NCBI RefSeq assembly: GCF_001194135.2
Contig: NC_068983.1
Location: forward strand, 92,162,129-92,226,128
Source: Octopus bimaculoides
Lineage: Eukaryota
Length of the DNA: 64,000 nucleotides
Direction of reading: 5' to 3'
The notes below the pieces were generated by a model. That model searched no databases. It worked only from the letters and a program-made list of their open reading frames with translations, and was not told the DNA's origin. The position numbers and the translations under genes are program-made. Below, one piece after another: positions 19,141 through 39,560 of this stretch (positions are counted from its first letter, which is position 1; every line of letters begins with the position of its first letter).

Positions 19141-19278
19141 AGCTACTTGTTCTCTTACAATTTTGTCAATCATGGATAACTTCAGGTCATTGGGTTTTAT
19201 CCCATCTCATGTTGGTATTGTTGTCTTATGCAGTGCCTTATGTATGTATGCATATATATATATATATATATATATATA

Positions 19279-20289: not shown

Positions 20290-21430
20290 AATACCAACTT
20301 TCACCTTACTGGCAGCATCCCTGTACATAGCATGACAGCTCTCACTAAACACTCATCTAGCCCTAGCTTCCACATTACTACCAGAAAGATGAAAGTTGGC
20401 AACAAATATAGCAATGAATTCAGTGTATGGGTAGGAGTTCATCTAAGATCAATTCTCAGTCCCCACTTGTTTATTTTAGTCTTCCATGCCTTAACAGAGG
20501 AATTAAAGACTGGCTGCCCCTGAGAGCTCTTCTAGCCTGATGTCTTTGTTCTTATAGCTGAATCACTACCTGACCTAGAGAAATTTCAGGTGTGGAAGCA
20601 AGGCCTGAAATCTAAGGGCCTTAGAGTTAATTTAACTAAAACCAAAGTCCTAGTAAGTAGGAAAACAGACAAATCAGAAACCCCTTCAGGGAAATGGCCC
20701 TGCTTGATATGTAAGAAGGGTGTTGGAAGAAACTCCATATGTTGTACCCAGTGCAAGCTTTAGCCAAATAAGAAGTGTAGCAGTATTACAGGAAGGTTAA
20801 CAAAGAAAATAGTTTTGGTGTGTGGCAAATTTGCAGGTACAATAAGCACTAAAAATGTCAGATGTTCGAGGAGATCATTAGATCATTAGAAATAGTAGAT
20901 AGCTTCTGTTACTTGTTAGCAGTAGAGGAGGAAGTTCTGAAAGAGTAGTTGTTAGAATAAACATGGGCTGAACAAATTTCAGAGAGTTTCTACCTTTATT
21001 AGTAACTAAGAGCCTTTCCCTCAAAGTAAAAGGCAGATTGAATGATACCTGTGTATGTACAGCTATGTCACATGGCAGTGAAACATGGGCTTTGACAACA
21101 GAAGTATTATGATGGCTTGAAAGAAATGAAACAACATGCTCCTCTAGATGTATAATGTCAGTGTACACGTATCACAGAGTAAGTGATTTTAGAGGAAAGC
21201 TGGGTATAAGAGACATCAGATGTTGTGTGCAAGGGAAAAGACTGTTCTAGTTTGGTCATGTGATGCATATGGATGAGGGCATCTGCATAAAGAAGTGCTG
21301 AACTCTAATTGTGGAAGGAAGCTATGGAAGGGGTAGACCCAACAAGATGTGGGCTAGAGTGGTGAGAAAGGATCTTCAGACAGTGGGCCTCACTGAAGAA
21401 ATGTCAAGGAATCAGGAGTTGTGTCAGTTT
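20290..21430 (+). mobile_element. RTE-clade LINE 3' half with PHD-like insert in RT
   Basis: GVHLRSILSPHLF, KSKGLRVNLTKTKVL, WPCLICKKGVGRNSICCTQC, KGRLNDTCVCTAMSHGSETW, GRGRPNKMW. Confidence 0.8.
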
Positions 21431-21739
21431 GTTGTACTTGAGAAGACTCTCCAAGCTAAATAAAATTGCTGTCATCTATAAATACAAGCTAGTCCTTTAC
21501 AGGTGCCAGTGTCACAAAATGCACTCGTGCCAGATCTGCATAAATGCACACTTTGTAAAGTGGTTGGCATTAGGAAGGGTATCCATCTGTAGAAACCATA
21601 TCGCAACAAACAGCTGGAGTCTGAAGGACTCCCCAGCTGGCCGGCTCCTGTCAAACTATTCAACCCATGCCAGCATGGACATTAAATGATGATAATGATA
21701 AACATACACACACACACATGCATGCGTGCGTGTGTGTGT

Positions 21740-22870
21740 GTGATGAGGAACCTGGTGGGACATCCAAGACACCCCAGAATTCACCATAGACCTTTTCCAC
21801 TCAGTGTCAAATACCCTAGCATTGTTAACAAAGGTGATGTGAAGTTTCCTGCCTCACTGTCTGCACCCCCTGCCACATTGGTGGAACCCCATCTTCCCTG
21901 AAGCCACAGCAAGACCCTGGGAGGTTCTGGCAAGAACTTTGTCTACAATGGAGAGTAAGGCTGTGGCTGGAGCAGTTAGACTTCTCTTCCTTGTTCTTAT
22001 ATAGGGTGATTATGACAGCATTGTAGAAATGCTGTATCTTGCCTTGCTCCCAACTGCAGACAAAATGCTTGTGGAGTTTTGAGTGCAGTGTTCTGTCACC
22101 ACCCCTCCGTGTCTTAGGCAGGATTCCACCAACTCCTGCTGCCTATCCACTTTTCAGTTGCTCTTTGGCTTTGATTGTCTCTGGGGAGGGAATTTCATCC
22201 AGCTCTGACTGAAAAGGCTGCTGTGGGATATGAAGCATTGCCATATCTTGGACTGAGTGGTTAGCCCTGAAGAGAGTTTGAAAGTGCTCTGACTACTGGT
22301 GCAAGTTGGAGGCCTTGTCTGTGAAAACATCTTTCTTTTTGCGCAATGAACTCTGGACCTGGTGTGTTGGACCATACACAGCTTTTTGGGCTTCATAAAA
22401 CATCTTGTGGTTGCCAGTGTCTGTGCTGAACTGAGTTCTTTTGACAAGTTTTATCCATCTCTCATTTTTAATCTCTTGGAGTTTGCACTCACATTACTGA
22501 AAGGCTGCTTTCTTCTCAGGGTAGCATGGGTTTGCAAGGTGAGCACAGTGGGCAGATCTTTTCTTTGCTTGTAGTTTTTGGATTTCTTAGTTATTTTCAT
22601 TTAACTTGTCCTTGTTCATTTTTGTGGAGAAGCCCAGTATTTCTTCAGAGGTTTTTCAGGATGGCTGTTTTTAGGTGTTCCAAAAGCACTTCAGGGAAGG
22701 GGTCTGTGGGATCTTTAACTGGAGGTTTGCCTGAAAGTTATCTTTCGCTTCAGCTGATAGCAGGATGCTCACCTGGAACCTTTTCCTTTGAGCTCCACCT
22801 CTCTTGGCCTTTGGTTTGAAGTAGAGACTGAGTTTGCAGGGACAAAACTATGGTCTGAGTGGCATATATC
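21740..22870 (-). mobile_element. RTE/BovB-like LINE fragment (EN-RT linker and RT start)
   Basis: MFYEAQKAVYGPTHQVQSSLR...DKASNLHQ*SEHFQTLFRAN..VQD...IPQQP..SELDEIPS.ETIKAKEQLKSG*AAG and AVIITLYKNKG. Confidence 0.7.
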
Positions 22871-22929
22871 ACTATACATCACTCTAGTGTGAAGAATTTC
22901 ACTCTGGTCTCTTTTCTGTACTAGAATGT

Positions 22930-24060
22930 AATTTATGCTCGAGGATCAGCAGGCTGGGTTGGGTGCAGCAGTGGCCTTACTGAACCCTTTCCCATTAGCA
23001 ATGGTGCTAGGTTGAGCTGCATCTTTACACTGACCTTTTCCATCATCTTCTCCAGTGTGGTGCTCCAGTGGGCCACTGGGGGCTCTGGTGATGGGAATGA
23101 TTGTGGCACATCACTTCTTACTTTGTGGAGGTTGCTCAGCACTATGGGGCCCAATGTTCGAAGGTCATTCTTCACCTCATCTCATGTCTTCCTGGGTCTA
23201 CCTTTTCTACAGGTTCCTTCCACAGTTAGGGTGTGGCACTTCCTCACACAGGTGTCCTCATCCATATGTAACACATGACCATACCAGTGCAGTCGTCTCT
23301 CTTGCACACCAGATTTGATGCTTCTTATGTCCAACTTTTCTCTCAGGGCGCTCACATTCTGTTGTGTATACACACTGACATTACACATTCAGCGGATCAT
23401 ACTAACTTCATTTCTTTTAAGCCTACGCATGTCTTCAGCAGTCATGACCCATGTTTCACTGCCATGTAGCATGGCAGTTCGCACGCATGCATCATACAGT
23501 CTACCTTTCATCCTGAGTGAGAGGCTCTTAGTTGCCTGCAGAGATAGAAGCTCCTTGAACTTTATCCAGGCTATTCTTATTCTAGCCACTACACTCTCAG
23601 AGCAACTACCCCCACTACAGACTTGGTCACCTAGGTAGCTATCAAATTGATGGAGTTACAATGTATATCCAGGAACATGTCTCACCTGTAATCATGCTGT
23701 CATCACGTTCGGATAGTGCTTTTTACGTGTCATTGGCATGGGAGCCAGTCGGGGTACTGGCATCAGCCATGTTTGGATGGTGCTTTTTATATGCTGTCAG
23801 CTACTAGTTTTTCTCCCTGGCATGTGATGGAATCTGTTTTCTGTACATCTTCAGGGTTTAAACCCTGTGCATCTGCCACACACAAAAAATGTCTTCCTGG
23901 TTAAATTTCCTTTGATATTGCTGCACCTTTTATCTGTCCATAGCTTATACCGGGTACATTGTATGGAGTTTCTACCCATGCCTTTTGTACAGATCGAGCA
24001 AGGCCATCTACCTGAAGGGGTTTGTGATTTGTCAGCCTTCCTACTTACATATATACTACA
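22930..24060 (-). mobile_element. RTE-clade LINE 3' half with PHD-like insert, inverted relative to the 20290 copy
   Basis: ORFs 23851-24063 (WPCSICTKGMGRNSIQC..KRC...VCGRC), 23389-23589 (KGRLYDACVRTAMLHGSETW) and 23182-23388 (RRLHWYGHVLHM..KGRPRKT). Confidence 0.8.
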
Positions 24061-24081
24061 CATATTATGTATATATTTATA

Positions 24082-24116
<35 letters not shown>

Positions 24117-27100
24117 GTATATGTGTATGTGTATGTGTGTGTGTGGTAACTTTTTGAAACCTGCATAATTTGTTAATAAAATTTTCTACATATATGTCTC
24201 AGGTGGTATAGATTACAATTATATTAGAATTTGTCATGTAAAGCATTTTTCTCTCTCTTTTAAATACACTCAAAGGCAGCCAGTCCTCAACGTGGTTGTT
24301 TAGTATGCTAGAAATAGTAGTTATTAAGCATAAAAAAACAGCCACTATTCTGCTCTCCTAATATGCCGCAAAGGGGAAAAAAATGCATTGCAGTGTACTA
24401 GGAGCTGGGATTACTTGATAGCACTGGAAAAAATATGAGAAAGTGTATTAGGAGATGAGATCAGTAGATAACACAAGGAAAAAATAAAACGAAGAAAAAC
24501 CATTATTTCTCACTGAAATCGAGTTGAGTGTTGTTAAACTATAAATTTAAACTATATCTAAACTACGCCTTTTAAAAATATTCTGGCAAAAATCAGAAAG
24601 AAATTTTACAAGATCCCAAAGAAACTTTTATTTGTTGCATGTTGTTATGCTAAAAGAGATATACATAAAATGCAAATTAATAATAATTATTAATTAGAAT
24701 TTTTTGGAAGCTGGTTATAAACTTACTGATTATTTTTTTGTAGAAGCTCTGTTGTAAGACACAGTACTGTCTGTGTGGCAAGAACTTTGTTTCTTAGTTA
24801 TATGTTTCTGGATTTAGCACCAGTGTGTGACACCAAATGTCTTGCCCTATAGCCCCGTGTGCGCGTGTGTAGCTGTTTGTTCAAAACCTGAATGGGTGCT
24901 ATTTCAAAGAGATTTCCTCTTTTAAACAAGAGAAAAGAAATTTTATCTCATCTGCCCCATCTTTCTCACTCCCACTATACATATACACATGCTTGCATGT
25001 GTCTGAGTATACAATTCCCCACAAAATAAAAATACATATGCATAGAATCATACACATAAATACAAAGACCTCAACCAAACCACTATCAAAAATAATTGAA
25101 CTTTCAACCTTTAACCATTGTAGCCAAAATACTGAGTACTGAATTCTTTTACACATTCACACTCCTTTAGCATTTTACTTTTTTTAATACATACATACAG
25201 ACAGACAGAATTCACTTTATTGAAGTAATAAAGTTTCCCCCAAATTAAAGATACACACACACACACATATATATATAAAATACACTTTATTGAAATAAAA
25301 TGTTTCCCCCAAATTAAACATATTTATAGAAACTAACATACACAAACATATGCACACATATATACATACAATTCACTCATACATACTCTCACAGACACAC
25401 AAATATTTTACCCAAACATCCCCATAAACACTCCAAAACATTCACGTACAAACATACATATTGTCCTTTACACTAAAAATACACTTAATTTTTTCAAATT
25501 CAGCAGCTGACAGAAGCAATTTTGAATGAATGGGCTTGTGTTGCTAAAGTGTAGAAAGTATGTTTTTTTCTTTTTTTTGAAAAACCATGTAGAATTTTTT
25601 AAAAGATTTCAGGGAGACCACCTTTATGAAATGTCACAGTATAGAATGTGGCCCTCTTGAACATGGGGGCCTAGTTGGGTGCAATCGGTCCAGTTGGCTT
25701 AAGGCTGGCCCCGACAGTACTTTTCAGTCTGTTTAAATGTATCCTCATTAGTAGAAAACCTCAAAATATAGAGTGAGATATATGTAATAATAAAATTAAT
25801 TATATTTTTAGGATGATTAGAATTTTTACTTTGGTATCTTGAGGATTTATTTGGTTTATAGTATGATATATCCCTGTGCTCCTTGGTGAGGGCTCCTTTG
25901 ACTGCTACAGCTTGGTTTCAGCATTTTAAGAATTCATGTAATCATTATCCCAATTTTCCAACTATGCTAAATCTCTACAGCTTGTGACATATCCTCTGAT
26001 TAACCTTGTCAAAAGCCTTTGTAAAATCAAGACATATTTCATTTATATTTGAATTATTCATTAGTTGTTTCAGTCATAATGCTGCAGAATCTGTGTGAGA
26101 CAGCTTCTCTTTGGGAAGAAGCCATGCAAGGCAGGGCTGGATTTATGGGTAGGGGGGCAATTGCCCCAGGCATCTAGATATTGGTGGAGGGCCACTACTA
26201 GGAAGGATATGTAGCACTCGATATAGGAAGGCCCTCTCCATCTCCCAGCAATTAGGCATGAAGAGGTTCTCTTTCAATACACAAAGGTGTCTTGACTTCT
26301 TAAAAAAAGTAATGGATTCTCTTTTATGATAGCCACTTTAGAGACATCAAATAATTCAGTTAAAAAACAGTTTATAGTCCCAAAGCACTTATAATTCTGA
26401 AGGAAATTTGTAGCTGCTTTTGGGATAGAAAAGGGAAACAGCAGAGTACTCCTGAAAATGTATGTATGTATGCACCTGTGAATCTGTGTGTGTGTGTGTA
26501 AGTATATATAAATTTATATAAAGATAAAGAGATTGATAGAAAAATGTTATTGTCTCTTGGCCCAAATTCTTTCAATGTATGACTGGGCTTGACCTTGGCT
26601 TGCCCAATAGTGGTTAAAGGAACAGACACACACACACACATTTCTAATTCTGAACTTATTTCAGTGAGACTTTGAAAGCAAGTAAGTAAAGAAAACTTTT
26701 GAGTTTAGTTTTAATTATAAAATCACATCTTTCAACAGCTAAAAGCATTCTTTTTCAGGTTTAGAATTATTGCATATATATTCAAATGTTTCTTAAAATT
26801 GAACCTTTTCCTTATTTTTTATATATTTTTTGTCATTCTGTCAAACACTTGCAATTAGTATATGGAAGTGGGGCAAAATTGGTAACTGGGTTGAAATCAA
26901 TATTTTCTGATTTCTTGTTATTTTCTCTTATTTTGTACCATTGCATCATCTTTGGGAGTAAAATTTTGTCAGTACAGGTTACATAGTTGAGAGTAAAAAT
27001 TGGTCAGTATAGTATTGTTATTGCAGTTGAAAGTTTGAAACATAGGTGACAGGTACTATTTTCAAGAAACTTTTTCTCAAATTTGACCCAATTGTAATTA

Positions 27101-27633
27101 AGATAACTAATAAAATATCTGGATAATTTTTGGTGAAGAAGCTATAAAAATATCTTATGTTGAATTTTTAGATTTAGTTGAGTTTCACTAATTTAATATT
27201 GAGTGATTTTTTCATAATCCTCTTTCATTTGACCACGATATTTTAAATTTTGTTACATTTCCGATGTCTAAGGATGGATGTTTATGTGTCTGACTTTTTT
27301 TTTTTTTTTTTCAATTTAATTTTGAAGAACTGAAACCTTGTCATGTCTTACCCATTTTGTCCCAATAAATTTGACTTTTATATGCTCAAAGAGAACAAAG
27401 ATAATTTTCTGAAATCATGTTCTGAATATGTTATAGATTTTACTGTATTTAGAGAAGGTCTTTACTTTGCTGATATAGTTTTGGCAAGGTGGTGAGCATT
27501 TTAAAAAACATGTATTCTCTTCAAAGTCAAAAATGTAGTAAATATTACTCATTGTGCCCCGCCTACTCTTACTTGAAACTGGAAAAGCAGACTTTCGCAA
27601 ATAGCTGTTTGAATTCCCTGTTTTTGTTGGGAT

Positions 27634-27944
27634 TGTGGTGTTATGGGCTGTGATGAGCTATGATGAGCTAGCTATGTGGTGTTGGTGGAGAGGATTGTAG
27701 ATGAGGCAAACGGAAGTGAAAACTGCAGGGGCTGGTGGAAGAGGGACAGGCAGGCATGACACCGAGTATATGTGTGCAGTTCGAGCAGAGATGGTGCGTG
27801 TTAAAGGTCGTGTTTTGATCTGGTCAGTGATCACTCATCTCGCTACGGGCGACAGGTAAGGTCGCTGTATTCCTTTCTCCCTTTTGCTTCTTGTTCTGTT
27901 GTCTTTTTCCTCCATCACGCTACAAGCTATTTCAGCCCATAACA
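27634..27944 (+). repeat. 5' LTR with 12-bp inverted ends TGTTATGGGCTG...CAGCCCATAACA
   Basis: First about 85 bp shared with 31520-31603; inverted 12-mer at 27639-27650 and 27933-27944. Confidence 0.7.
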
Positions 27945-30900
27945 AAAAGATCGGNNNNNNNNNNNNNNNNNNNNNNNNNNNNNNNNNNNNNNNNNNNNNN
28001 NNNNNNNNNNNNNNNNNNNNNNNNNNNNNNNNNNNNNNNNNNNNNNNNNNNNNNNNNNNNNNNNNNNNNNNNNNNNNNNNNNNNNNNNNNNNNNNNNNNN
28101 NNNNNNNNNNNNNNNNNNNNNNNNNNNNNNNNNNNNNNNNNNNNNNNNNNNNNNNNNNNNNNNNNNNNNNNNNNNNNNNNNNNNNNNNNNNNNNNNNNNN
28201 NNNNNNNNNNNNNNNNNNNNNNNNNNNNNNNNNNNNNNNNNNNNNNNNNNNNNNNNNNNNNNNNNNNNNNNNNNNNNNNNNNNNNNNNNNNNNNNNNNNN
28301 NNNNNNNNNNNNNNNNNNNNNNNNNNNNNNNNNNNNNNNNNNNNNNNNNNNNNNNNNNNNNNNNNNNNNNNNNNNNNNNNNNNNNNNNNNNNNNNNNNNN
28401 NNNNNNNNNNNNNNNNNNNNNNNNNNNNNNNNNNNNNNNNNNNNNNNNNNNNNNNNNNNNNNNNNNNNNNNNNNNNNNNNNNAAGTTGCAAAAGCTGCCG
28501 AACATCAACTCAATGGCGATGGCAGATATTATAACTTGGGCTCGCGTGCTAGTTTTGTGTTGCAGGACGCCGCCAGTAGCATCAACTGCAACAACGAAAA
28601 GTGGCTGAGCAAGGAGTAGTGGAGAGGGGTCAAACAAGGAACGTGTGTGACCATTCAAAGGACAGTGTTTCCGGTGTCAGGGCTGTACGACAACCCTGAT
28701 GATTCCAGGAGAGACATGGAGTGGAGAAAGCAGTGTGAGGGCAGTCGACGGAAGAGAGGTACACTGTGAAGGCATTACAGATGTGCAGATTGTGGAACAA
28801 AGCTGACGCTGCAAGCAATTGTACTTGGCCACTTGGTGGACGAAATTGATGTGGTGATGGGGATGGATGCAATCACCCATTTAGGAGGTGTCACTGTCAA
28901 CGAGGCCTGTGTAACATCCGGGGTTGCGGGGAAACCATGTATGGCGAGACCGTGCATTGGTGAGAACCGTGAAGAAAACTATGCTGCGCACACCATTGAA
29001 GACCAGGACTTTCTTGCTGTCTTCGATGGCCAGAGGTGGACAGTGGAGTGGCACTGGAAGGGAGAGCTCCCGACGTTAAAAAATAAAGTGGGCTGCTATC
29101 AGCATACTTTGAAAGGAGTTGCCAGAAGCGAGTTCGAGGGGGAGGTGGAGCGGTGGATTAAGGAGGGCATATTGATCCCTTGGGAAGAAGAAGTAGAGAG
29201 CGGAGTCCTGCTGCTGATGGCGGTGGTACAGCCCACAAAGGATAATGTCAGACCAGTGCTTGACTTCTGAGAGCTGAATGACCACATATCATGTCATACG
29301 GGCGGTGAAGCCACAGATGTCTGCAGGGACACCTTGCGAGAGTGGAGGCAGATGACAGGGGCCTCCACGATCATTGATTTGAAGTTGGCATACCTGCAGG
29401 TGCATGTGGCTGAGGGACTGTGGAAGCATCAGCTTGTCAGGTATAAGGGCTGGACATATCTGTCTGACCAGGCTGGGTTTTGGGCTAAATTCAGCACCAA
29501 AGATTATGGCAACAATTCTCAAGGCCATCCTGGGAAAGGTGGACAGAGTAAAAAGGGCCACCAATTCGTACATCGTTGACATCCTTGTGGATGAAGCCAT
29601 AATGCCAGCAATGGAGGTCATAGGCCACCTGAAGAGTTTTGGACTGATTGCCAAGCTGCCAGAGGCCATAGAGGGAGGCGCTGAAATGGGCCTCAAGCTA
29701 TGGAGAGACAAGGCCTGCGCATTGGTGTTTCGGCGAGGGAATGAGATCCCCGAACTGGGCAACAACATGAGTAGACGGGAACTGTTCTCGGTGAGTAGGA
29801 AGCTGGTGGGACACTACTCGGTTGCAGGATGGCTCTGGACAGCATGTAGCTTTATCAAGAGATGAGCTGAAAGAGCAAAGTGGAATGATAAAATGGGGGA
29901 GAAGACGACCGACATGATGCAGGAAGTCTTGGTCAGAGTGAGAGCAGAGGATCCAGTGAGGGGCAGTTGGTATGTTCCCAAATCAAAGAGTGGGATCGTA
30001 TGGTGTGACGCCAGTAGCATCGCAATAGGGATTGTCTTAGAAATGGGAGGCGTCATGGTGGAAGAAGCAGCCTGGCTCAGGAAGACGGATGAATGCAGCC
30101 TTATCAATGTGGCAGAGTTGGATGCCGTGTTGAAGGGGGTGAACCTGGCCTTGAAGTGGGGGCTGTGCACCATAGAAATTAGGACCAATTCGGCCACTGC
30201 GCTTGGTTGGGTGATGGCAGTCATCACCAGTGAGCAGAGGGTGCGAATCAAAGGGGCTACAGAGATGTTGGTAAAGCATCGATTGGGGATACTGCATGAA
30301 CTAACCGCAGAGTTCGATCTGAAGCTGAGCGTGATCTTTGTGCCTTCCAAAAAGAACAGGGCAGACGTCCTGACCAGGGTAAAGCAAAGTCTGGTTGCAG
30401 GTGCAAGAGGATGCGGAGAAGGCTGTGGCTGCAGTATGCTGTCTGAGTGACTCGGAGCTGAAGAGACTGCATACCATGCATCACATGGGAGTGGACAGGA
30501 CATTGTTCCTAGCCAGGAAAGTCGACTCTGATGTAACAAGACGGAGTGTGCAGAGAGTGGTTAGCAGCTGCGACAGGTGCCAGTCTATCGACCCTGCTTT
30601 GGGCGTACATGAGGCAGGAAGTATTCCAGTGCACCACAACTGGAAACGACTGGCAGTGGACATAACATACTACCGGCAGGGGTCGTACCTCTCAATAGTT
30701 GACTGCGGACCGGGGCGGTTGGCCATATGGAGGGAGATGAAGACGGGGACTGCAGAGGAAATTGCAAGAGTATTAAATGAGATATTCCTGAAACGAGGCC
30801 CCGTGGATGAGCTGCTTCTGGATAATGGCATTGTATTTCGCTCGGAGGTGCTGAAAGAAATGCTTGATGAATGGTAGGTCGGCTGCTTCTTCAGAGCGGC

Positions 30901-31603
30901 ATACCGACCAAGTGGAAATGGAGTGGTGGAAAGGCATCATCGTACCATCAAGACCGTGGTAGAGAGGGGCCACATTTCACCAATCGAGGCCGTATTTTGG
31001 TACAATATGTCGCCCAGGTCAGGACAGGCTGAGGAGTCGGTGTCACATAGGGCAATATTCAGGTACGAGTGGAGGCATCCGTGTACTGCATCAATGCGAC
31101 CCAGGGGAGAGGAATAGCACACCTTTGTGCAGGTCGGGGAAGAAGTTTGGGTAAAAACCCCAAATGCATGGTATACATCACAATGGGGAAAAGGAACAAT
31201 AACCTCCATCAATTCGAAGAACAACGTGTCTGTCTATGGTATGTCACACCATGTTTTGGATGTGTGAAAGATTGTCATTGCCTCAGAGTATGAAACCAGC
31301 AGCAGTGGGCAAGAAGATGAAGACAGCAGCAGTAGGCAAGATGATGAAGCCAGCAGCAGTGTACCAGGAACTCAGGCCAGTCCCGGGGTTGCACAGTGAC
31401 CACAGAGGGAGCGGCGCCCTCTTCCCTGGTTGACTAATTATGAAACCAATTAAGGTGTGAGTTCGGGAGCAAGGATAGAGTGGGAAAGCCGGTTGAGTGA
31501 TCTGTAGATCAGTGGGGCGTGTGGTGTTATGGGCTGTGATGAGCTATGTGGTGTTGGTGGAGAGAATTGCAGATAGGCAAATGGAAGTGAAAACTGCAGG
31601 GGC
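27634..31603 (+). mobile_element. LTR retrotransposon (PR-RT-RH-IN order), compact pol, degraded; 3' LTR runs into a gap
   Basis: Matching LTR starts at 27634 and 31520; purine tract agtggggcg before the 3' LTR. RT VRPVLDF, DLKLAYLQ, RLGFGLNSAP, SYIVDIL. RH CDAS..INVAEL..NRADVLTR. IN H.MHHMGVDRT..CDRC, LAVDIT, LLLDNG, GVVERHHRTIK. Confidence 0.87.
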
Positions 31604-34600
31604 NNNNNNNNNNNNNNNNNNNNNNNNNNNNNNNNNNNNNNNNNNNNNNNNNNNNNNNNNNNNNNNNNNNNNNNNNNNNNNNNNNNNNNNNNNNNNNNNN
31701 NNNNNNNNNNNNNNNNNNNNNNNNNNNNNNNNNNNNNNNNNNNNNNNNNNNNNNNNNNNNNNNNNNNNNNNNNNNNNNNNNNNNNNNNNNNNNNNNNNNN
31801 NNNNNNNNNNNNNNNNNNNNNNNNNNNNNNNNNNNNNNNNNNNNNNNNNNNNNNNNNNNNNNNNNNNNNNNNNNNNNNNNNNNNNNNNNNNNNNNNNNNN
31901 NNNNNNNNNNNNNNNNNNNNNNNNNNNNNNNNNNNNNNNNNNNNNNNNNNNNNNNNNNNNNNNNNNNNNNNNNNNNNNNNNNNNNNNNNNNNNNNNNNNN
32001 NNNNNNNNNNNNNNNNNNNNNNNNNNNNNNNNNNNNNNNNNNNNNNNNNNNNNNNNNNNNNNNNNNNNNNNNNNNNNNNNNNGGACAGCAATAATCACAA
32101 AAAATGATTTTCTATTTTGTAATTTTCTGTCATTTTATCTTATTCTACATTCTGATACATGTAACTCACATTAAAAGAAAAAAAAATCTTACCCCACTCT
32201 TCCCTCTTTCATTGTGCTTTTCACAATGAAGAAAAAAATCAAACACTGCAAGTGGATGTGTGAAAAATGAAACTTGAATTCTTTGATAAAGTGTATCTAT
32301 AAAGCAACACTTTTAGTCATTTATTTAAACTTTCTCTGCTAACTCATCAAATTCAATTATTTGAAATAGATGGGTTTTGAGATTTAAATTTGATAATTTT
32401 CTAAGATTTTAATTCTTGTGTATAAGGGGCCCACTGAACTTGAAGTGCTCTGGGCCCCCCATGGTTTAAATCCGGTCCTGATGCAAGGTGTCGAAGTAAG
32501 TCATTATCTTCCAGGAAGATGACCAGCTTCCGCTTGACAATTCGTTCAATGACTTTGCTGACCTGTGAAGTTAGAGAAACAGGCCTATAAGTCTTAACAT
32601 CTGCTCTGCTTCCACCTTTATGGATAGGTCATATGCCCTCGTTTAACTTTTTGAGATGTCTACCACTTACAAGGAGTCTTTGGAAGAGGATCTATGGGGT
32701 CTAGTGAAGGCCCCTTTGCATTTTTTGGGTAGATTGCCAGGAACTCGTCAGGGCCAGTGGTGAGTTTAATCTTATTTCATCAATGGCTGATATTACATTA
32801 GTTTCCTTTATATCAATTTAATCGATTATTGCCATCCCTTTATGTAAAGCTGTAGTGTCAAAGAACTCATCACGTATATATATTTGCAAGTGTCTCAAGG
32901 GAGATCTGAAAACACTTTTGTATTGCACACTGTATTTCACTTTGTATTTCACTTATCCTCACAAGATATGCAGAATATACAGTCAGTAAGCCATTTTCTT
33001 CGAATAATGGCTTTATATTGTACCATACTGAGGCATACTTTTTCAAATTTGTTGAAGGCTTTAGGGTTCATTTTTACAGCCCAGACATGTTTTCTGCTCT
33101 CCCCTTTACAAGGGAATGTTTGAGTTTGTTTTCAATCTCAAATACTGCTTGTTTCACAAAGGACCCCTCACTATTCTTTAGAGGCCCATTTAGATAATGC
33201 AAGATTTTTATTAGTCATCTCATTTGAATTTTCCTATCCTTTGGAATTGTGTTTTTCTGTTGGCCTGATAGTCTCTCTAGAATAAACTTATTGCAAATGT
33301 TGCATGATTGTGATAATGTGTTGTAGTTTTATGTCAATATCCTACATAGAGGGACGAGTAGACCAGTTTTAGATCCCTTTCTGAATACTTTTCCAGTTGA
33401 CTTTATGAAAGTTCAGGTGGAAAGGAGTTGGGTGCTTCATGTTCGCAGTTTTCCTCAGACTATACATTGTTAGTTCTACTAAGTTATGATCTGAAAAAAT
33501 TGTTAATGTCACTTTAACATGAATGAGTGATGCATTATTTGTGAAGCAGAGATCCAGGATTTTTACTCTTTGTTGGATGGAACACTATTTGCTTCATGAA
33601 TAGCATGTTTGTAAGGTCAAGTAGAGACTGTTTACCTCTGCTCATGCTGTGACATACCTGAGAGGAAACTACCCTCGGACCATTGAACATTACAGAGGTT
33701 AAAGTCTCCTAACAGTACGTGAAGGCTGTCATCTAAGTTGGTTAATGCTTCTTCCATCCTTTTGAAGTTCTCTCCGAATGAGTCCCCATGATTTGGAGCA
33801 TCTATTGGGTGATATGTATTGCCATTTTGATCTGTTTCGTAAGTATGACAGCATGATTACAGGTGAGACATGTTCCTGGATACACATCCTAACTCCATCA
33901 TGAATTCTTCCCCTTCTCTCAATTTGAAATACAACATAGTTCTGTATGTGTATTTTGGTATCAGTTAGGTGTATTTCTGCTAGTGCCATGCATGTAACTA
34001 AGTCTCTCAGATATGAGGTTTTGTGCTGGTGGGATGTTATGAAGCCTCTGGCATTCAACAACAATGGTGTGGTGTTTGGGGTGTCCAGAGTGGCTATTGG
34101 TTTGACTTATGTGGAAGTGTCAGGAGTGGTCATCCATGAGCTTTCATTGTTTGCAGTGGCCTTGCATGCTAGAAATTGTTTTTTTGATTCTGTGTTTCTT
34201 CTAGCCAGGTAAGCTTCCTTACAATCTTCTGTGCCATGTCCGAAGAAGACTGCTGTTCAGTGCTGCTGTACATGCTGTATCTATATATTTTTCTTTGAAA
34301 CAGTATAAATCTCATCTGCATATTTTAAAGGTGGAGACACTGTTTGTTGTGACCTGATCTTTGGATGTTCAAAGCAGCAGCCTATCCTCAGCTCTACCTT
34401 GCAGGTAGAATTTACTTACTAGGTGTCTGTGTGTGTTGTCTATTTTTTGTGGGGTTTTCATTGACACCTTTTAATATAGGCAACCTAAGTGGTTTCTTTC
34501 CATGATTGTTCTTTCTGAGAGCTGTTTGTTTTGGTTTTTCTTCTCTTTTATTTGTGTTTTCTTTTCTATGTATATGTATGCATATATAAATGAATGTGTG

Positions 34601-34799
34601 TGTATGTGTACGTATGTATTACCTAGCAGAAGCAGGAAAGAAGTGGTTTGCCAAAGTTATACAGCAAGAAGATCAGAGATGAGAGGTATTCCAGATAGCT
34701 TGACAGTATACCTGAGGGAATCAAGATATTGTGAGTGAGAAGTGTGCATGAATGGATAATGGTATGCTTGCACTTAGTTACTCTTATAAGAAAGAGGCA

Positions 34800-35520
34800 T
34801 GGATATGCTACAATGAAAAGTTATTAAATGTGGAGAATGCATGAGAGAAAAAAGGATCTTTCCAATGAATGATAGGCAATCAAGGATATGAAGACAGAGA
34901 AAGCCTCTGGTGTATCAAGAATAACTGCTGAGATGCTTAAAATATCTTGTGGGGTATTATACAGTCTAATAACCTGTGTAGTTAATCAGGAACGTATCAT
35001 CCCCAATGACAGATGTACCTGCATTATAGCCAAGGGTTACAAGTGTAATGGAAATACTTTAGAAAGAAGTCACTACAAAGGTATGAAAGTTAGAGAGAGC
35101 ATTATAACTAAATTAGAAACAGAATTAGAGAAGATGAACTGCAGTTTGGTTTTGTGCTGGTTAGAAGTACTAGTGATGCTATCTTCCTAGTGAGATAACT
35201 GCAGCAGAAGTATTTAGCTAAATGTAAAATATTACACTTGGCATTTGTTGATCTGGAGAAAGCATTCGAAAGAGTCCTTCACTTTGATATGGTGGTCTCT
35301 GAGGTAGCCAGAGCTAGATGAATGGCTTGATGGAGGTGCTAGCAGTAAGGTGGAAGTTAACCATGAGTACAAAGAGGAATTTAGTCTGCCAGTAGGCATG
35401 CATTAGGTTCAGTTCTCACTCCCCTCATATTCATCTTAGTCTTTCAGGAATTTAAGTCCAGCTACTCCTGCAAATTACTATATGCTAATGAACTCATTCT
35501 GATAGCAAAATCTGTAACAG
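34800..35520 (+). mobile_element. RTE LINE RT fragment
   Basis: MKTEKASGVSRITAEMLK, LAFVDLEKAFE, GMH*VQFSLP..F. Confidence 0.6.
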
Positions 35521-35529
35521 AATTAGAAA

Positions 35530-35870
35530 TAAGAATTCCAATGGTTTTAGGATATCATTTTTGCTAGGGTATTGCCTAGCAAATTGTAATTGGTTTCTAT
35601 TACATACTCACTTCTTGGTTTTCTCTCCAAGATTTCTCTGATGTAGTAGTAAGAAAGAGCTGTTCTTCTTTGTGGATTCATCAAGTACCTCAGATAGAAA
35701 TTTGTTCAAATATTCTCTTAAAACATCCCCATCTACATCTTGCAGGTCTGTGATATAGTTTGGCAGAGTGTGGAAAAGTTGTGGATCCTTGAAACATAAG
35801 TTGTTACAGTACTGGGTCCTTACCCTGGATAAAGAGATCAGGACCTTTGGTACTATGTAATGGCATCCAG
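35530..35870 (-). mobile_element. CR1-like LINE 3' end fragment
   Basis: NNLCFKDPQLFHTLPNYITDLQDVDGDVLREYLNKFLSEVLDE resembles the CR1 C-terminal GP.LFN.LP..IR......F...LDKFL..VPD. Confidence 0.5.
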
Positions 35871-35973
35871 TTCATATATATATATNNNNNNNNNNNNNNN
35901 NNNNNNNNNNNNNNNNNNNNNNNNNNNNNNNNNNNNNNNNNNNNNNNNNNNNNNNNNNNNNNNNNTATATATA

Positions 35974-36320
35974 TGAGGGGTACCCGAAAGTAACTGGAAA
36001 CATTCTCTGTGGGACAAGCCCGTTGTAGTTCAGGCTTCTACTGCTAGAAGCCTCTTGATACAACCCTCAAGCATCAGTCTACTCACTGGTGTCATTGATT
36101 GGTATTGCACTGCCATGTGGTGCGTCTTTGTTTTGCTTCGCCCCTGTTCGTCAATTCTGTCTGTTGACCTCTGAACGAATGTAAACATCATGAAAATTCA
36201 TGAGCTGATCTTGAAGGACTGTCATCGAATGATTGCCAAACTTTTTGATATAACTGTTGTGTTCTAGAGCTCTTGCCAACGAATTTTGAGCGAGGAATTA
36301 TGAATGGAAAGCAGTTTTTT
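35974..36320 (+). mobile_element. Tc1/mariner 5' fragment
   Basis: ta-tgaggggtacccgaaagtaac terminus; HTH remnant KIHELILKDCHRMIA..SCQRILSEEL. Confidence 0.5.
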
Positions 36321-36574
36321 AGTTTTTGTGTTAAGTTTCTGTTTGTCGCTTTTGGTCCAATCAACAATTCTTTTCACTATCTGTTTTTGGTAATTTCTGG
36401 TGGGGAGGCTTTGGTCTCGTGCTGCAATTAAAAATCCTTTAGTCTCTGTTTTTATCCCTGAGCTTCTCAGACATTGTTGGGATTTTACTTTGTCTGTTTC
36501 TTTTCTGTTTAGTTTAATCCAGTATTTGCCATGAAGGGGCTTTTCTTGCTATTGTTTTATCATGATCCATTACT

Positions 36575-39560
36575 ATTCTAGTATATGGCAGTTTGCACAT
36601 ATACATCATACAATTTACCTTTCACTCTGAGCAAGAGGCCCTTTGTCACCAGTAGGGGTAGAAGCTTTCTGAACTTCGCCCAGGCTATTCTTATTCTAGT
36701 GGTAACACTCTCTGACTATCCACCCCCACTACAAACTTGGTCACCTAGTTACCAGAAGCTATCAACTACTTCTAGTTACTCCCCCTGGCATGTGATGGAA
36801 TCTGTTTTCTGAGCATCTGTGGTGTTTATTGCTCCTGTGCATCTGCTGCACACGAAAGCTATCTTCCCATTTAATCTTCCTTTGACATTGCTGCATTTCT
36901 TATGTGTCCATAGCTTACACTGGGTACATCTTATGAAGTTTCTACCTATGCCTTTTCTACAGATTGAGCTGGGCCATCTACATGAAAGGGTGTGTGATGT
37001 GTTCACCTTCCTACATACTAGAACTTTGGGCTTTGCAACATTGACTCTAAGGCTCTTCGATTCTAAACCTTGCTTCCACACTTGAAATTTCTTCTCTAGT
37101 TCTGGTAGTGATTCTGCTATGAGGGCCAGGTCATCAGCATAGAGAAGCTCCCAGGGGCAACCTGTCTTGAATTCCTCTGTTATTTCCTGGACCCCTACTT
37201 CTACCTGGAATTCTTCACTATAAACATTGCCAATCCTAACCCTACTAATGGCATCTCTGTATAAGGCCTATACAGCTCTTATTAACCATTCATTAATCCC
37301 CAGTTTCCGCATTGCCCACCAGATAAGGGATTGGGGGACTCTGTCAAAGGCTTTCTCCAAATCCACAAATGCCAAATATAGGGGTTTATCTTTGGCTAGG
37401 TACTTCTCCTGCAGTTTCCATACCAGGAATCATTAAAAGCAAGTGCACCATCATTCATGCGGACACATTTCTCTCCTGTGACATCACAATTTTCTCTCAC
37501 ACACTGTCTTGCAATCCAAAATACTTCAGTTCTTTGGTCCTCATGTTGCTGGCTATGTATACCTGTCTATGTATACCTGTCGCCCTGGCTATGTATACCT
37601 GTCGCCCTGGCTATGTATACCTGTCGCCCAGCCTCCCTTTTAGCTATCTGGTACAGTTCCCTGCTACCCCCACCCTTCCAGGCCTGTTTCTTTGCTCTGA
37701 TGGCTTTGTCTACCGTATTATTCCACCACCATATTACTCTAACCTGAAAGGGACTTTGCACCACCCGCAGACTTGGTCTGTGGCACTCAGTAAGCTGTCC
37801 CGTAGGAATTTGCAGCTACCTTCTATGTCTGAGGACTGTCACTCCTCCTCCCTCTCATCAAATTTCTTGACGAGGATGTCCCTAAATCTCTGACCATGTG
37901 AAGGGTTCTTTAGCTTCCAAATCCTTCTCTTCTGGATTGGTCTGCTTCCTGGCATCCTTCTGGTCTCTAGTCAAAAGTCACTAATGACTAGTCTATGTGG
38001 GGTGCATCCCTCACCTGAGAGGATCTTTGCATTTTAGAGCAACCCTGCGTCCCACTGTCTGGTGAGGATGAAATCAATCTGGCTAGTTGAGTCACCTGAT
38101 TGATAGGTTATCAAGTGGCCGTCTGGCTTCCTGAACATTGTGTTGCAGATTAAAAGGTTACATGCATCACATAACTGCAGTAGCCTAGATCCCTCATTGT
38201 TCTGGGAACCAATACCATGGCCCCCATATATACCAGTGAAGATATGGGATTTCTGCCGAACTTGCCCATTAAAATCTCCAGCCAAAAAGATGGTCATTGC
38301 CATTCATCTTTGAGGTAGTCTGTAGAAGGGTATCTTAAAAATAGTCCTTCTGATCATTTGGTAGTCCCACTTGTGGGGTGTAGGCAGAGATAATTGTAGC
38401 TGTACTGTTCTGTAGAACTAACCTGAGCTTGAGCACTCTATCACATATCCTGACAACCTCTATGACCTCATCCACCCATTTCTCCACAAGGAGTATGCCT
38501 ACACCCCATACTCCATCGATGTTACCTTGCCAGAAGATTTTATACCTATGTGCCTTGCCTGTGAGGACCCTAACTGAAGCTCCTCTCCATCTTACCTTTT
38601 GTATGCAGCATACATCGACCCGTCTCCTTTCAAGCATCTCTACAATCTCACTAGACCTACCTTTCAGTGTGCCTATATTGACAGTGCCAAGTCTGAAAAC
38701 TGGGAAAGGATGTGGGGTGAGGCTTGGGGAGGAGAGATGTTATTCAGCGCCTGAAGAGGGAGGTTGTCGTGTTCATTTTTTAGGCATGCTTCACCTGTTC
38801 TCACTTCCGACCTGACATCATTCAAACATTCAAGCGTGTTGAGATTGTTATCCCTACTGGCGGTAGGAGCAGGTGTTAGCAGCATTGTAAGTATAAGCAT
38901 TATGGTCATCGTAATAATGTAAATTTAAGTGGTGTTGCAAATATGGATATTCCAATGTTAGATTAGGTAGAGAGTCAGCTAAGCTGTTTGTGTTTGTCCA
39001 GGAGAGGGGATTGCAGGTATGATGGTGGGTACCACCAGCAGGGGCGGGGTTCAGACAGAGAGAGAGGAAACTAGCTCATCCCTACAAACACATAAGCTTG
39101 CACGTGCACCTACACACAGGAACAAGCATACATGGATAGCCCATTAGCTTTCTCCTTCACTTGATATGTCCAAGGAAAATTCCTGGGTAGTTGTTGGCAT
39201 GTTTCTAGATGGAACAAAACAAAAGATAGCCAGTTAGGTAGGTGGGCAGCTAACCTAGTTGCATTTGTCCCAGTAGAGAGAGAGAGAGGGTGCAGGTAAT
39301 ATAGAAAATAGCACCAGTAAGGAGAGGGGAATTGAGAGGAGAGACATCTGGTAATGGGGGTGACAAATTTCTAGACAGAACGAAACAAAAGAGTTGGTTA
39401 AGTAGGTGGGCAGCTGAGCTAGTTGCATTTGTTCCAGGAGAAAGAGAAAGAGTGCAGGTAATATATAGAGAACAGACCAGTAAGGAGGAGGGGCTGAAAG
39501 AAGAGACATCGAGTAATGGTGGTAGGAGGAGAGAGAGATATCCAGTGTAGATGGTGGGAA
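36575..39560 (-). mobile_element. RTE-clade LINE with APE, RT, PHD-like insert and tandem 5' repeats; 3' truncated, internally deleted
   Basis: APE IGTVNIGRLKGRSSEIVEMLERRRVDVCCIQKVRW, IISAYTPQVG, LAGDFNG, SQIDFIL. RT LAFVDLEKAFDRVP, CPWELLYADDLAL. PHD-like segment at 36776-37081. Confidence 0.85.

What the first reader, a model, noticed from the sequence alone, without database searches (positions are those of the whole stretch)
20690..37081. RTE retrotransposon family with a C4HC3 PHD finger inserted inside the reverse transcriptase
Seen in three independent copies (about 20696-20835 +, 23851-24063 -, 36776-37081 -): between the KTKVL motif that follows YADD and the later D/E.F.YLG motif lies WPC.IC.KG.GRNSI.CTQCKLWTHK(K/R)CS..KG.L..K..FVC.RC, i.e. 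C-x2-C-x9-C-x2-C-x2-W-x-H-x2-C-x14-C-x2-C. Established: this is canonical PHD spacing including the W-x-H; PHDs often read histone H3 tails; PHDs are known in ORF1 of some CR1/L2 LINEs, whereas typical RTE RTs have only a short linker here. Inference: an RT-embedded chromatin-reader module could steer insertion or RNP localisation. I am not aware of a functional description but could not search.
Basis: partly seen in the sequence, partly recalled or inferred. Interest (0 to 1): 0.72.

Follow-up and report, generated by a model that had tools for sequence, protein, structure and literature searches.

The report
PHD zinc finger inside LINE polymerase
Dead octopus copies of an ancient, widespread jumping-gene family (RTE-type LINE) carry a conserved PHD zinc finger spliced into the middle of their reverse transcriptase, at a spot where related enzymes touch the DNA they insert into; no description of this was found in the papers searched.

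Summary
Three decayed, independent copies (PHD at 20701-20832 +, 23869-24000 -, 36839-36970 -) carry a Cys-rich module between RT motif 6 (KTKVL) and motif 7 (F.YLG). None touches an assembly gap, and none keeps all eight ligands. Relatives do. Pfam PHD scores above its threshold. Predicted structures match PHD fingers, Pygopus best. Intact single ORFs of about 1000 aa (APE + RT + PHD) exist, and named hits come from molluscs, cnidarians and amphioxus. Real BovB proteins align collinearly except for one 68-residue insertion, which supports RTE-group membership. The function is not shown. The finger keeps two likely methyl-lysine cage aromatics but is strongly basic (mean net +6; window copies +9 to +11), unlike its acidic H3K4me-reader neighbours. 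It occupies the position of R2 "motif 6a", which contacts target DNA. My best reading is a target DNA or nucleosome engagement module used during target-primed reverse transcription. Nine literature searches (a tenth failed) found no description. I rate it a new variant of a known kind.

The parts
20323..21700 (+). Copy 1: 5'-truncated, decayed element covering RT from about motif 3, the PHD, thumb/C-terminal domain, a 3' UTR of about 230 nt and an (ATG/GAT)-type tail
   Evidence: tblastn to P0001 aa 65-444; stop and tail read; tail module match
20524..20568 (+). Copy 1 RT motif 5, decayed (ELF*PDVFVLIAESL in place of LLYADDL...)
20635..20655 (+). Copy 1 RT motif 6 (TKTKVLV)
20701..20832 (+). 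Copy 1 PHD finger, C1 to C8 position: CLICKKGVGRNSICCTQCKL*PNKKCSSITGRLTKKIVLVCGKF. The Trp, the His and C8 are lost
23149..24054 (-). Copy 2: strongly 5'-truncated element (from motif 6 onward), bounded at its 5' side by a microsatellite
   Evidence: tblastn to P0001 aa 166-420
23869..24000 (-). Copy 2 PHD finger: CSICTKGMGRNSIQCTRYKLWTDKRCSNIKGNLTRKTFFVCGRC. C4 is replaced by Tyr and the His by Asp
   Evidence: PF00628 at 15.5 bits, below threshold
36584..38700 (-). Copy 3: the most complete copy, with APE from about 38700, RT, PHD and the start of the thumb. It has frameshifts, stops, an internal deletion after motif 4 and a 22-bp x3 tandem repeat. Family homology ends at 36584
38034..38700 (-). 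Copy 3 apurinic-type endonuclease domain
   Evidence: Hits are PF03372 proteins named 'craniofacial development protein 2-like' in Octopus bimaculoides and O. sinensis
37130..37141 (-). Copy 3 RT catalytic YADD (motif 5)
37016..37036 (-). Copy 3 RT motif 6 (AKPKVLV)
36839..36970 (-). Copy 3 PHD finger: SSICRKGIGRNFIRCTQCKLWTHKKCSNVKGRLNGKIAFVCSRC. C1 is replaced by Ser; the other seven ligands and the Trp are kept
   Evidence: PF00628 at 25.9 bits against cut-off 24
36740..36769 (-). Copy 3 RT motif 7 / primer grip (VVDSFW*LGD)
42820..43536 (-). Copy 4 (not in the finding): 3' fragment only, with the C-terminal 78 codons, a 3' UTR with hairpin repeats and an (ATG)n tail. It has no PHD region
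19900..20257 (+). A further 3'-UTR end of the same family ending in a (GAT)n run. It abuts gap 19279-19899, so its upstream extent is unknown

Best explanation
Shown: the window holds dead copies of a single-ORF, APE-type non-LTR retrotransposon of the RTE group. Its reverse transcriptase carries a canonical C4HC3 PHD zinc finger as an insertion of about 68 residues between RT motif 6 (GLRVN..KTKV) and motif 7 (F.YLGD, the primer grip). The module is an old, selected part of the enzyme. It is present and ligand-complete in most coding relatives from molluscs, cnidarians and amphioxus, and it is as conserved as the neighbouring catalytic motifs, while the two linkers that flank it are not.

Inferred: during target-primed reverse transcription the finger acts as a built-in target-engagement module. 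It sits where R2 elements have 'motif 6a', a loop that wedges into upstream target DNA. Its conserved Lys/Arg surface most likely clamps the target DNA, or nucleosomal DNA, next to the priming site. The two retained cage-type aromatics (Y/F/W two residues before C1 and the invariant Trp before the His) leave room for a second contact with a methylated lysine such as H3K4me. RTE elements lack the C-terminal Cys-His domain that other LINEs have, so this finger may supply an equivalent zinc module.

The confidence given (0.45) is for the inferred mechanism. The shown part (what the module is and where it sits) I hold at about 0.95.
For: Identity of the module:
- Pfam PHD scores above its gathering score in copy 3 and in 5 of 5 intact members tested.
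- 100 of the 120 best homologs have all eight ligands, in nearly all of them 57 residues after YADD.
- The eight ligands, P203 and W224 are invariant in 60 sequences.
- AF2 of RT+PHD gives pLDDT 88.8 and pTM 0.84, with the PHD and both linkers at pLDDT 91-96. That suggests a rigidly docked domain rather than a floppy one.
- The PHD-only model hits only PHD fingers in the PDB top 50. Pygopus is best, at TM 0.63 and rmsd 2.4-3.8. The sequence search gives the same neighbours.

Placement in the RT:
- The strand and helix order of the model puts the PHD between the motif-6 strand (residues 180-189) and the motif-7 hairpin (269-284).
- BLASTP, MAFFT and phmmer against real BovB proteins show one clean insertion. 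HSP 1 ends at KTKIMVSG and HSP 2 restarts at LDVVDSFCYLG.

Selection:
- Column conservation is 0.67 for the PHD, against 0.65 (motif 6), 0.71 (motif 7), 0.59 (thumb plus C-terminal domain) and 0.39 (both linkers).
- 216 representatives of 50%-identity clusters match at E<=1e-30 and 2230 at E<=1e-10.
- Intact ORFs of 1004-1042 aa exist with APE+RT. PHD is above cut-off in one, just below in another and not matched in the third, which has a longer His-Cys spacing.

Mechanism:
- Net charge averages +6.1 (range +1 to +12; window copies +9 to +11).
- Conserved basic positions are K201, K227, K/R228 (98%) and R246. Acidic residues occur only at 239 and 241.
- R2 motif 6a contacts or wedges into upstream target DNA in cryo-EM structures (PMC11204384; PMC11601368; PMC12247875).
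- Pfam finds no other zinc module in the C-terminal part.
Against: - No binding partner has been measured. The mechanism is inference from position, charge and analogy.
- R2 uses a restriction-like endonuclease and N-terminal DNA-binding domains, so the geometry of target DNA around an APE-type RT may differ.
- I had no access to model coordinates. Neither the orientation of the finger relative to the nucleic-acid cleft nor the equivalence to motif 6a was checked by superposition. The equivalence rests on motif order and on the naming convention.
- The DNA-binding PHD fingers listed in the 2018 review are atypical C3HC2H variants with an extra beta-sheet, unlike this canonical C4HC3 finger (PMC6222470).
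- The closest solved relatives are all histone H3K4me readers.
- PHD-less RTEs such as BovB are highly successful, so the module is not essential for the RTE mechanism.
Confidence: 0.45

Rival explanations
1. Pure chromatin reader. The finger binds the histone H3 tail, most likely H3K4me2/3, and steers integration or RNP retention to marked nucleosomes. This would parallel the way chromodomains steer chromoviral integrases.
For: - The nearest solved PHDs by sequence and by fold are Pygopus, JARID1A/KDM5B PHD3, CFP1, PHF23, BPTF, TAF3, DIDO and ING, which are H3K4me2/3 readers.
- The Trp in C-x2-W-x-H is invariant, and an aromatic sits two residues before C1 in 81 of 100 members (Y 48, F 18, W 15). 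From my own knowledge, not tested here, these correspond to Pygo2 Y328 and W353, which wall the methyl-lysine pocket.
- The beta-1 segment G-V-G-x-N-S-I, which pairs with the H3 backbone in reader PHDs, is nearly invariant.
Against: - The finger is net +6 on average and +9 to +11 in the octopus copies, with no acidic residues in the C1-C6 half. The H3 tail is itself strongly basic, and the pieces of Pygo2, fly Pygo and JARID1A PHD3 printed are net -4 to -7.
- The acidic loop residues that Pygo has between C2 and C3 are replaced by a loop two residues shorter (alignment).
- There are no insertion-site data.
Confidence: 0.25
2. Internal structural or template-handling zinc module. The finger only stabilises the palm-thumb junction or grips the RNA template or cDNA, and has no role in choosing or holding the target. 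It would functionally replace the C-terminal Cys-His domain that RTE elements lack.
For: - pLDDT is high through both linkers, which suggests a domain packed onto the RT body.
- The surface is basic.
- No other zinc motif is found in the ORF.
- The insertion lies directly upstream of the primer-grip hairpin.
Against: - BovB and other PHD-less RTEs work without it, so no structural gap needs filling.
- Retention of reader-type surface residues (the Trp, the aromatic before C1 and the GVGxNSI strand) is more than a pure scaffold would need.
Confidence: 0.2
3. Protein-protein adaptor. The finger recruits a host factor, as the Pygopus PHD binds BCL9/Legless HD1 on the face opposite its histone pocket, or it mediates element multimerisation.
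For: Pygopus PHD, the best structural and sequence neighbour, is a dual binder of H3K4me2 and the BCL9 HD1 domain, according to the PDB entry titles listed.
Against: - No partner is known.
- Similarity to Pygo is modest (25-32% identity, TM about 0.6).
- The conserved basic patch is not explained by this reading.
Confidence: 0.08
4. Not a real feature: a chance Cys/His pattern, another zinc fold (RING, C1, B-box), or a host exon captured only by the local octopus copies.
For: - Weak sub-threshold Pfam hits to C1_1, C1_2, zf-RING_16 and a B-box model overlap the segment.
- None of the three window copies is ligand-complete.
Against: - PHD is the only model above its curated threshold.
- The His is the fifth ligand, as in C4HC3 (PHD), not the fourth as in C3HC4 (RING).
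- All top-50 fold matches are PHD fingers.
- The module is present at the same position in relatives from other phyla and in hundreds of clusters.
Confidence: 0.01

Closest known systems
RTE-group non-LTR retrotransposons, represented by BovB (real Bos proteins P0140, P0129 and P0122 fetched)
   Same: - N-terminal APE and a single ORF of about 1000 aa.
- No ORF1, RNase H or C-terminal CCHC found.
- 3' end made of a trinucleotide repeat.
- RT core 33-35% identical.
- The whole C-terminal domain is collinear, including RLRW.GH..R, G.R.RGR...W and DR..WR.
   Different: BovB has 11 residues between KTKIMASG and VETVSDFxFLG. This family has 79, including the 44-residue PHD core. The octopus subfamily also has a longer 3' UTR (about 550 nt in L001) with tandem hairpin repeats.
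PHD fingers in ORF1 (or at the ORF2 N-terminus) of CR1 and L2 LINEs (Kapitonov and Jurka 2003, from my own knowledge; Metcalfe and Casane 2014, PMC4120745)
   Same: A PHD finger carried by a LINE. Their HHpred best templates are also Pygopus PHD entries (3zpv, 2vpb), as here.
   Different: Those fingers are separate N-terminal modules of ORF1 in the Jockey superfamily. Here the finger is spliced into the catalytic RT domain of an RTE-group element that has no ORF1. Homology between the two sets of fingers was not tested.
R2 retrotransposon RT 'motif 6a'
   Same: An extra element between RT motifs 6 and 7. In R2Bm, R2Tg and R2Pm cryo-EM structures it contacts or wedges into upstream target DNA.
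   Different: In R2 it is a short loop and not a zinc domain. R2 uses a restriction-like endonuclease plus ZnF/Myb domains for site-specific targeting, whereas this family uses an APE. The positional equivalence is inferred from motif order, not from superposition.
Pygopus, BPTF, TAF3 and JARID1A-PHD3 type H3K4me2/3-reading PHD fingers
   Same: - C4HC3 spacing and the C-x2-W-x-H-x2-C-[STV]-G core.
- An aromatic two residues before C1 and an aromatic two residues before C7.
- The same fold in the model.
   Different: This finger is net basic, not acidic. Its C2-C3 loop is two residues shorter than in Pygopus and lacks Pygopus's acidic residues. Its ligand is unknown.
Chromodomain of chromoviral (Ty3/gypsy) integrases (own knowledge)
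   Same: A chromatin-reader fold fused to a retroelement's integration machinery. It is the precedent for mark-guided insertion.
   Different: It is a different fold, sits in a different enzyme (the integrase C-terminus) and belongs to a different element class. The comparison is conceptual only.
RTE-2_OV / RTE-2_OB, the brain-expressed octopus RTE LINE (PMC9115989)
   Same: An octopus RTE-clade LINE with a single ORF of 1109 aa and a microsatellite at the 3' end.
   Different: That paper reports EN, RT and a 'C2H2' zinc finger, and its domain description mentions no PHD. Its sequence was not in the held part of the supplements, so I could not test whether it belongs to the PHD-bearing family.

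Membership tests
RTE group of non-LTR retrotransposons | Apurinic/apyrimidinic-type endonuclease N-terminal to the RT | tested here: met
   The copy 3 APE (38700-38034) hits PF03372 proteins named craniofacial development protein 2-like. Full-length relatives P0326, P0369 and P0296 have Exo_endo_phos plus RVT_1.
RTE group of non-LTR retrotransposons | RT groups with RTE/BovB rather than with other LINE clades | tested here: inconclusive
   On one phmmer scale, P0001 scores 150-154 bits against real BovB in two collinear domains. It scores 61.8 bits against R2 and 51.9 bits against L1 ORF2p, over the RT core only. The whole C-terminal domain is collinear with BovB. No phylogeny was built with reference RTE, RTEX, Proto2, CR1 or I sequences, so the subclade is undetermined.
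RTE group of non-LTR retrotransposons | Single long ORF, without a gag-like ORF1, RNase H or C-terminal CCHC domain; compact element of about 3.2 kb | tested here: met
   L004 is a 3248-nt contig with a 141-nt leader, one ORF of 1004 aa and at least 92 nt of 3' UTR. Pfam finds only Exo_endo_phos, RVT_1 and PHD. The octopus lineage has a longer 3' UTR.
RTE group of non-LTR retrotransposons | 3' end formed by short tandem repeats instead of poly(A) | tested here: met
   (GAT)n or (ATG)n runs end L001 and the window copies at 20257, about 21700 and 42820. PMC9115989 states that microsatellites are common in RTE elements.
PHD finger (Pfam PF00628) | C4HC3 ligand pattern with PHD spacing | tested here: met
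   C-x2-C-x10/11-C-x2-C-x4-H-x2-C-x13-15-C-x2-C in 100 of 120 homologs. The pattern is invariant in A1. The window copies have each lost one to three of the ligand or Trp positions.
PHD finger (Pfam PF00628) | Profile score above Pfam's gathering threshold | tested here: met
   Copy 3 scores 25.9 bits and P0001, P0016, P0008, P0005 and P0027 score 24.7-32.6 bits, against a cut-off of 24. Copies 1 and 2 and some full-length relatives fall below it.
PHD finger (Pfam PF00628) | Cross-braced two-zinc fold | tested here: inconclusive
   The predicted model matches only PHD fingers in the PDB top 50 (TM 0.55-0.64, prob 0.9-1.0), but the stand-alone model has pLDDT 70 and Foldseek E-values are 5e-3 or weaker. 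In the RT context the domain has pLDDT 93-96. Zinc binding itself cannot be tested here.
H3K4me-reading PHD subfamily | Aromatic cage for methyl-lysine and binding of the H3 N-terminus | not testable with these tools
   The sequence keeps the Trp (100%) and an aromatic before C1 (81%), but lacks acidic contacts and is net basic. There were no coordinates, no complex model and no binding data.
CR1/L2-type LINE PHD (ORF1 type III) | PHD located in ORF1 or at the N-terminus, upstream of the APE, in a Jockey-superfamily element | tested here: not met
   Here the PHD lies inside the RT, about 57 residues after YADD, in a single-ORF RTE-group element.

The most novel reading that the evidence does not exclude
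The polymerase itself carries a working methyl-lysine reader. Through the Y/F/W-P-C and W-x-H half-cage it would recognise H3K4-methylated nucleosomes, while its basic face lies on nucleosomal DNA. Target-primed reverse transcription would then be licensed only on marked chromatin. That would make this the first LINE lineage with histone-mark-guided integration built into the RT palm. It would date to before the cnidarian-bilaterian split, and the finger may share an origin with the ORF1 PHDs of CR1/L2 elements.
Probability: 0.25. Interest if true: 0.85.

Novelty: new variant of a known kind. Interest (0 to 1): 0.62.

Why it matters
LINE reverse transcriptases are viewed as tightly constrained, with accessory domains placed N- or C-terminal to the RT or in ORF1. 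Here a complete reader-type zinc finger is spliced into the catalytic domain itself. It sits at the loop that in R2 touches the target DNA, and it has been kept across hundreds of sequence clusters in several animal phyla.

If it engages target DNA or nucleosomes, it offers a natural example of how an RT can be given a built-in targeting or anchoring module. That is relevant to understanding LINE insertion-site choice in invertebrate genomes and to current efforts to engineer R2 and L1 enzymes for gene insertion.

It also gives a simple experimental handle. A 50-residue domain can be expressed alone and tested on peptides, DNA and nucleosomes. In addition, it raises the question of whether LINEs exchanged PHD modules between ORF1 and ORF2.

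Tried and rejected
- A strict C4HC3 regular expression on the six-frame translation of the window found nothing, because every local copy has lost a ligand. tblastn was used instead.
- Nine literature searches gave no paper describing a PHD inside an RTE RT. A tenth call failed on a term that was too short. Most 'PHD' hits were acknowledgements or concerned ORF1 PHDs.
- I could not test whether RTE-2_OV of the octopus-brain paper is this family. Its transcript (comp36575) is not in the held part of the supplements.
- A second RTE-like RT at 34683-35684 (+) might have served as a local PHD-less comparison. It is truncated right after its YANE motif at 35528 and says nothing.
- Copy 4 (43536-42820) is not the missing 3' part of copy 3. 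It lies upstream of copy 3's 5' end on the same strand.
- SINE partner: the 190-nt 3' module occurs only three times in the window, each time at the end of a LINE copy or fragment, so there is no excess that would indicate a SINE here.
- The RING, C1 and B-box readings of the Cys pattern were rejected. They give only sub-threshold hits and the ligand order is wrong.
- No full-length APE+RT+PHD protein appeared among the word-indexed hits. They were found only in the exhaustive representative search.

Full report
**1. What is in the window**

The window is AT-rich eukaryotic DNA (37% G+C) with six N gaps. The named best protein hits are from Octopus vulgaris, O. bimaculoides and O. sinensis, so the source is a cephalopod.

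tblastn with that peptide recovers all three copies. The C1-to-C8 stretches are 20701-20832 (+), 23869-24000 (-) and 36839-36970 (-).

Each copy is a pseudogene:
- Copy 3 has Ser at the first ligand and in-frame stops downstream.
- Copy 1 has a stop in place of the Trp, Asn for the His and Phe for the last Cys.
- Copy 2 has Tyr for the fourth Cys and Asp for the His.

The copies are 70-80% identical at DNA level, so they are separate old insertions.

**2. The gaps**

- None of the PHD stretches is within about 800 nt of an N run.
- No member of the family spans 27955-28482 or 31604-32082.
- Copy 3 loses family homology at 36584, 619 nt before gap 35886-35965, so that break is a truncation or insertion and not a gap effect.
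- A 3'-UTR fragment at 19900-20257 abuts gap 19279-19899, and its upstream extent cannot be known.

**3. Anatomy of the element**

Copy 3 (38700-36584, - strand) runs from an apurinic-type endonuclease through the RT, the PHD and the first thumb helices. Its APE hits PF03372 proteins that NCBI names "craniofacial development protein 2-like" in octopuses.

Copies 1 and 2 are 5'-truncated, as is usual for LINEs. A fourth copy, a 3' fragment only, lies at 43536-42820.

The closest relative with flanks (L001) has about 550 nt of 3' UTR with tandem GTGCCGGTGGCACGTAAAA hairpin units and ends in (GAT)7. The window copies end in the same kind of trinucleotide run at 20257, about 21700 and 42820.

Intact full-length relatives exist. 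P0326 (1004 aa), P0369 (1031 aa) and P0296 (1042 aa) all have Exo_endo_phos and RVT_1 in one ORF. PHD scores above its cut-off in P0369, just below in P0326, and is not matched in P0296, where the His-Cys spacing is longer. The contig carrying P0326 is 3248 nt, with a 141-nt leader, one ORF and no ORF1.

**4. Is it RTE?**

I used a BovB sequence recalled from memory only as bait. The search returned real Bos, Ovis and Capra BovB proteins 86-97% identical to it, and all comparisons below use those real proteins.

- BLASTP of P0018 against P0140 gives 35% identity over the RT core (E 9e-28). The first HSP ends at KTKIMVSG/KTKIMASG and the second restarts at LDVVDSFCYLG/VETVSDFVFLG. That leaves 79 residues between them in this family against 11 in BovB.
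- A MAFFT alignment is collinear through the thumb and the whole C-terminal domain (RLRW.GH..R, G.R.RGR...W, DR..WR), with a single clean 68-column insertion.
- On one phmmer scale, P0001 scores 150-154 bits against BovB, in two domains that skip residues 170-244. It scores 61.8 bits against R2 and 51.9 bits against L1 ORF2p, over the core only.

Together with the APE, the single ORF, the compact size and the microsatellite tail, this supports RTE-group membership. I built no tree with reference clades, so the subclade (RTE, RTEX or other) is open.

**5. Is it a PHD finger, and is it under selection?**

Pfam PHD (PF00628) passes its gathering score in copy 3 and in five of five intact relatives. 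RING, C1 and B-box models stay below theirs.

Among the 120 best homologs, 100 have all eight ligands, in nearly all of them 57 residues after YADD. The other 20 are truncated or show single-site decay. In a 60-sequence alignment with mean column identity of 46%, the eight ligands, the Pro before C1 and the Trp are invariant.

Mean column conservation by region:

| Region | Conservation |
|---|---|
| RT motifs 1-5 | 0.79 |
| Motif 6 | 0.65 |
| PHD | 0.67 |
| Motif 7 | 0.71 |
| Thumb and C-terminal domain | 0.59 |
| The two linkers flanking the finger | 0.39 |

An exhaustive profile search with the YADD-to-YLG segment against 1.84 billion cluster representatives gives 216 hits at E<=1e-30 and 2230 at E<=1e-10. 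Of the best 149, 96 keep all ligands.

Named members come from Mollusca (Octopus), Cnidaria (Hydractinia, Nematostella) and Cephalochordata (Branchiostoma).

**6. Structure**

AF2 on P0018 with the 60-sequence alignment gives pLDDT 88.8 and pTM 0.84. The finger and both linkers have pLDDT 91-96. The order is the motif-5 hairpin (144-155), a helix (158-174), the motif-6 strand (180-189), the PHD (200-250), the motif-7 hairpin (269-284) and then the thumb helices. The whole model matches R2 and L1 ORF2p structures.

A stand-alone model of the finger (pLDDT 70) matches only PHD fingers in the PDB top 50. Pygopus is best (TM 0.63, rmsd 2.4-3.8), followed by DIDO, BPTF, TAF3, MLL3 PHD6 and ING. The sequence search gives the same neighbours: Pygopus at 3.9e-5, then JARID1A/KDM5B PHD3, CFP1, PHF23, BPTF and TAF3.

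**7. What it may do**

Two lines of evidence pull in different directions.

For a histone reader:
- The neighbours are H3K4me2/3 readers.
- The Trp of C-x2-W-x-H is invariant.
- An aromatic sits two residues before C1 in 81 of 100 members.
- The GVGxNSI strand is nearly invariant.
- From my own knowledge, the two aromatics correspond to the pocket walls Y328 and W353 of Pygo2. I did not test this.

For a nucleic-acid contact:
- The finger is strongly basic (mean net +6.1, range +1 to +12; +9 to +11 in the window copies).
- The conserved basic positions are K201, K227, K/R228 (98%) and R246, and acidic residues occur only at 239 and 241.
- The pieces of Pygo2, fly Pygo and JARID1A PHD3 printed are net -4 to -7.

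Position also matters. R2 elements have an extra "motif 6a" in the RT. In cryo-EM structures of R2Bm, R2Tg and R2Pm it contacts or wedges into the upstream target DNA (PMC11204384; PMC11601368; PMC12247875). The PHD occupies the same place in the motif order.

A caveat comes from the 2018 review: the PHD fingers it lists as DNA binders are atypical C3HC2H types, and no finger was then known to bind both DNA and histone (PMC6222470).

I therefore commit to a target-engagement module during target-primed reverse transcription. DNA or nucleosomal DNA is the most likely primary contact, and a methyl-lysine contact is a live possibility. Every step of this mechanism is inferred.

**8. Comparison with what is known, and novelty**

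PHD fingers are known in ORF1, or at the N-terminus, of CR1 and L2 LINEs. Their best templates are also Pygopus PHDs (PMC4120745), which raises a possible common origin that I did not test.

I found no paper describing a PHD inside an RTE RT in nine full-text searches of PMC and bioRxiv. The octopus RTE-2_OV paper reports EN, RT and a "C2H2" finger, and its domain description mentions no PHD.

Automatic annotation has already labelled some members. UniRef, for example, names an O. bimaculoides protein "Zinc finger PHD-type domain-containing protein". Repbase Reports and subscription journals could not be searched. The co-occurrence of the domains is therefore recorded in databases, but apparently not described or studied.

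I rate the finding a new variant of a known kind.

Noticed in passing
window 42990-43140 (-), 19930-20080 (+); L001 1650-1880: The 3' UTR of the octopus subfamily contains tandem units of about 50-60 nt, each with the palindromic core GTGCCGGTGGCAC followed by GTAAAA. The number of units differs between copies; copy 1 has a much shorter UTR. These could be stem-loops recognised by the RT.
   Followed up: partly
L004 1-40 compared with window 20090-20135, 42960-42920 (-) and L001 about 1880-1920: The motif GGTTG(G)CGT(T/C)AGGAAGGGCATCC(A/G)GC(T)GTA(G)AAA lies about 140 nt before the tail in the octopus copies. It also occurs at the extreme 5' end of the unrelated metagenome contig L004, upstream of its ORF. 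It may be a 3' module conserved across distant family members (tandem or circularly assembled copies), or one shared with SINEs.
   Followed up: no
window 34683-35684 (+): A second RTE-like element (about 39% identical to P0001 over RT motifs 1-5, with a YANE motif at about 35480). It loses homology right after motif 5 at 35528, some 360 nt before gap 35886-35965. Whether that family has the PHD cannot be told.
   Followed up: partly
window 40376-41010 (-): Another, more distant LINE RT fragment (LLYMDDLKL; 25-28% identical to the family).
   Followed up: no
window 37562-37629: A 22-bp unit repeated 3.1 times (97% matches) inside the linker/RT N-terminal region of copy 3. This is a post-insertion tandem triplication that disrupts the frame.
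   Followed up: partly
protein hits P0002, P0019; P0123, P0129, P0147: Clearly animal LINE proteins are filed under bacterial or protist names: Herbaspirillum sp. MAG and Candidatus Thiodiazotropha MAG for the PHD family; Mycoplasmopsis arginini, Mycolicibacterium malmesburyense and Babesia ovata for bovine BovB. Host or culture-serum DNA contamination of those assemblies is the likely cause.
   Followed up: no
protein hit P0273; P0398: A plant protein (Bidens hawaiensis LOC143554507) matches the octopus-type APE at E 7e-34, and a filarial nematode entry (Acanthocheilonema viteae VBB35221.1) carries the RT-PHD module. Each is either contamination or horizontal transfer, for which RTE elements are known.
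   Followed up: no
window 24064-24160, 19230-19278, 21700-21750: (TA/CA)-rich microsatellites sit directly at element ends and at gap edges. The 5' truncation point of copy 2 runs into one.
   Followed up: no
alignment A1/A3, residues 250-258 of P0018: In many non-octopus members the linker right after the finger reads (T)ARPIDGRP. It is conserved in that subgroup but absent from the octopus lineage. The start resembles the ART of the H3 N-terminus, but as an internal segment it is probably coincidental.
   Followed up: no
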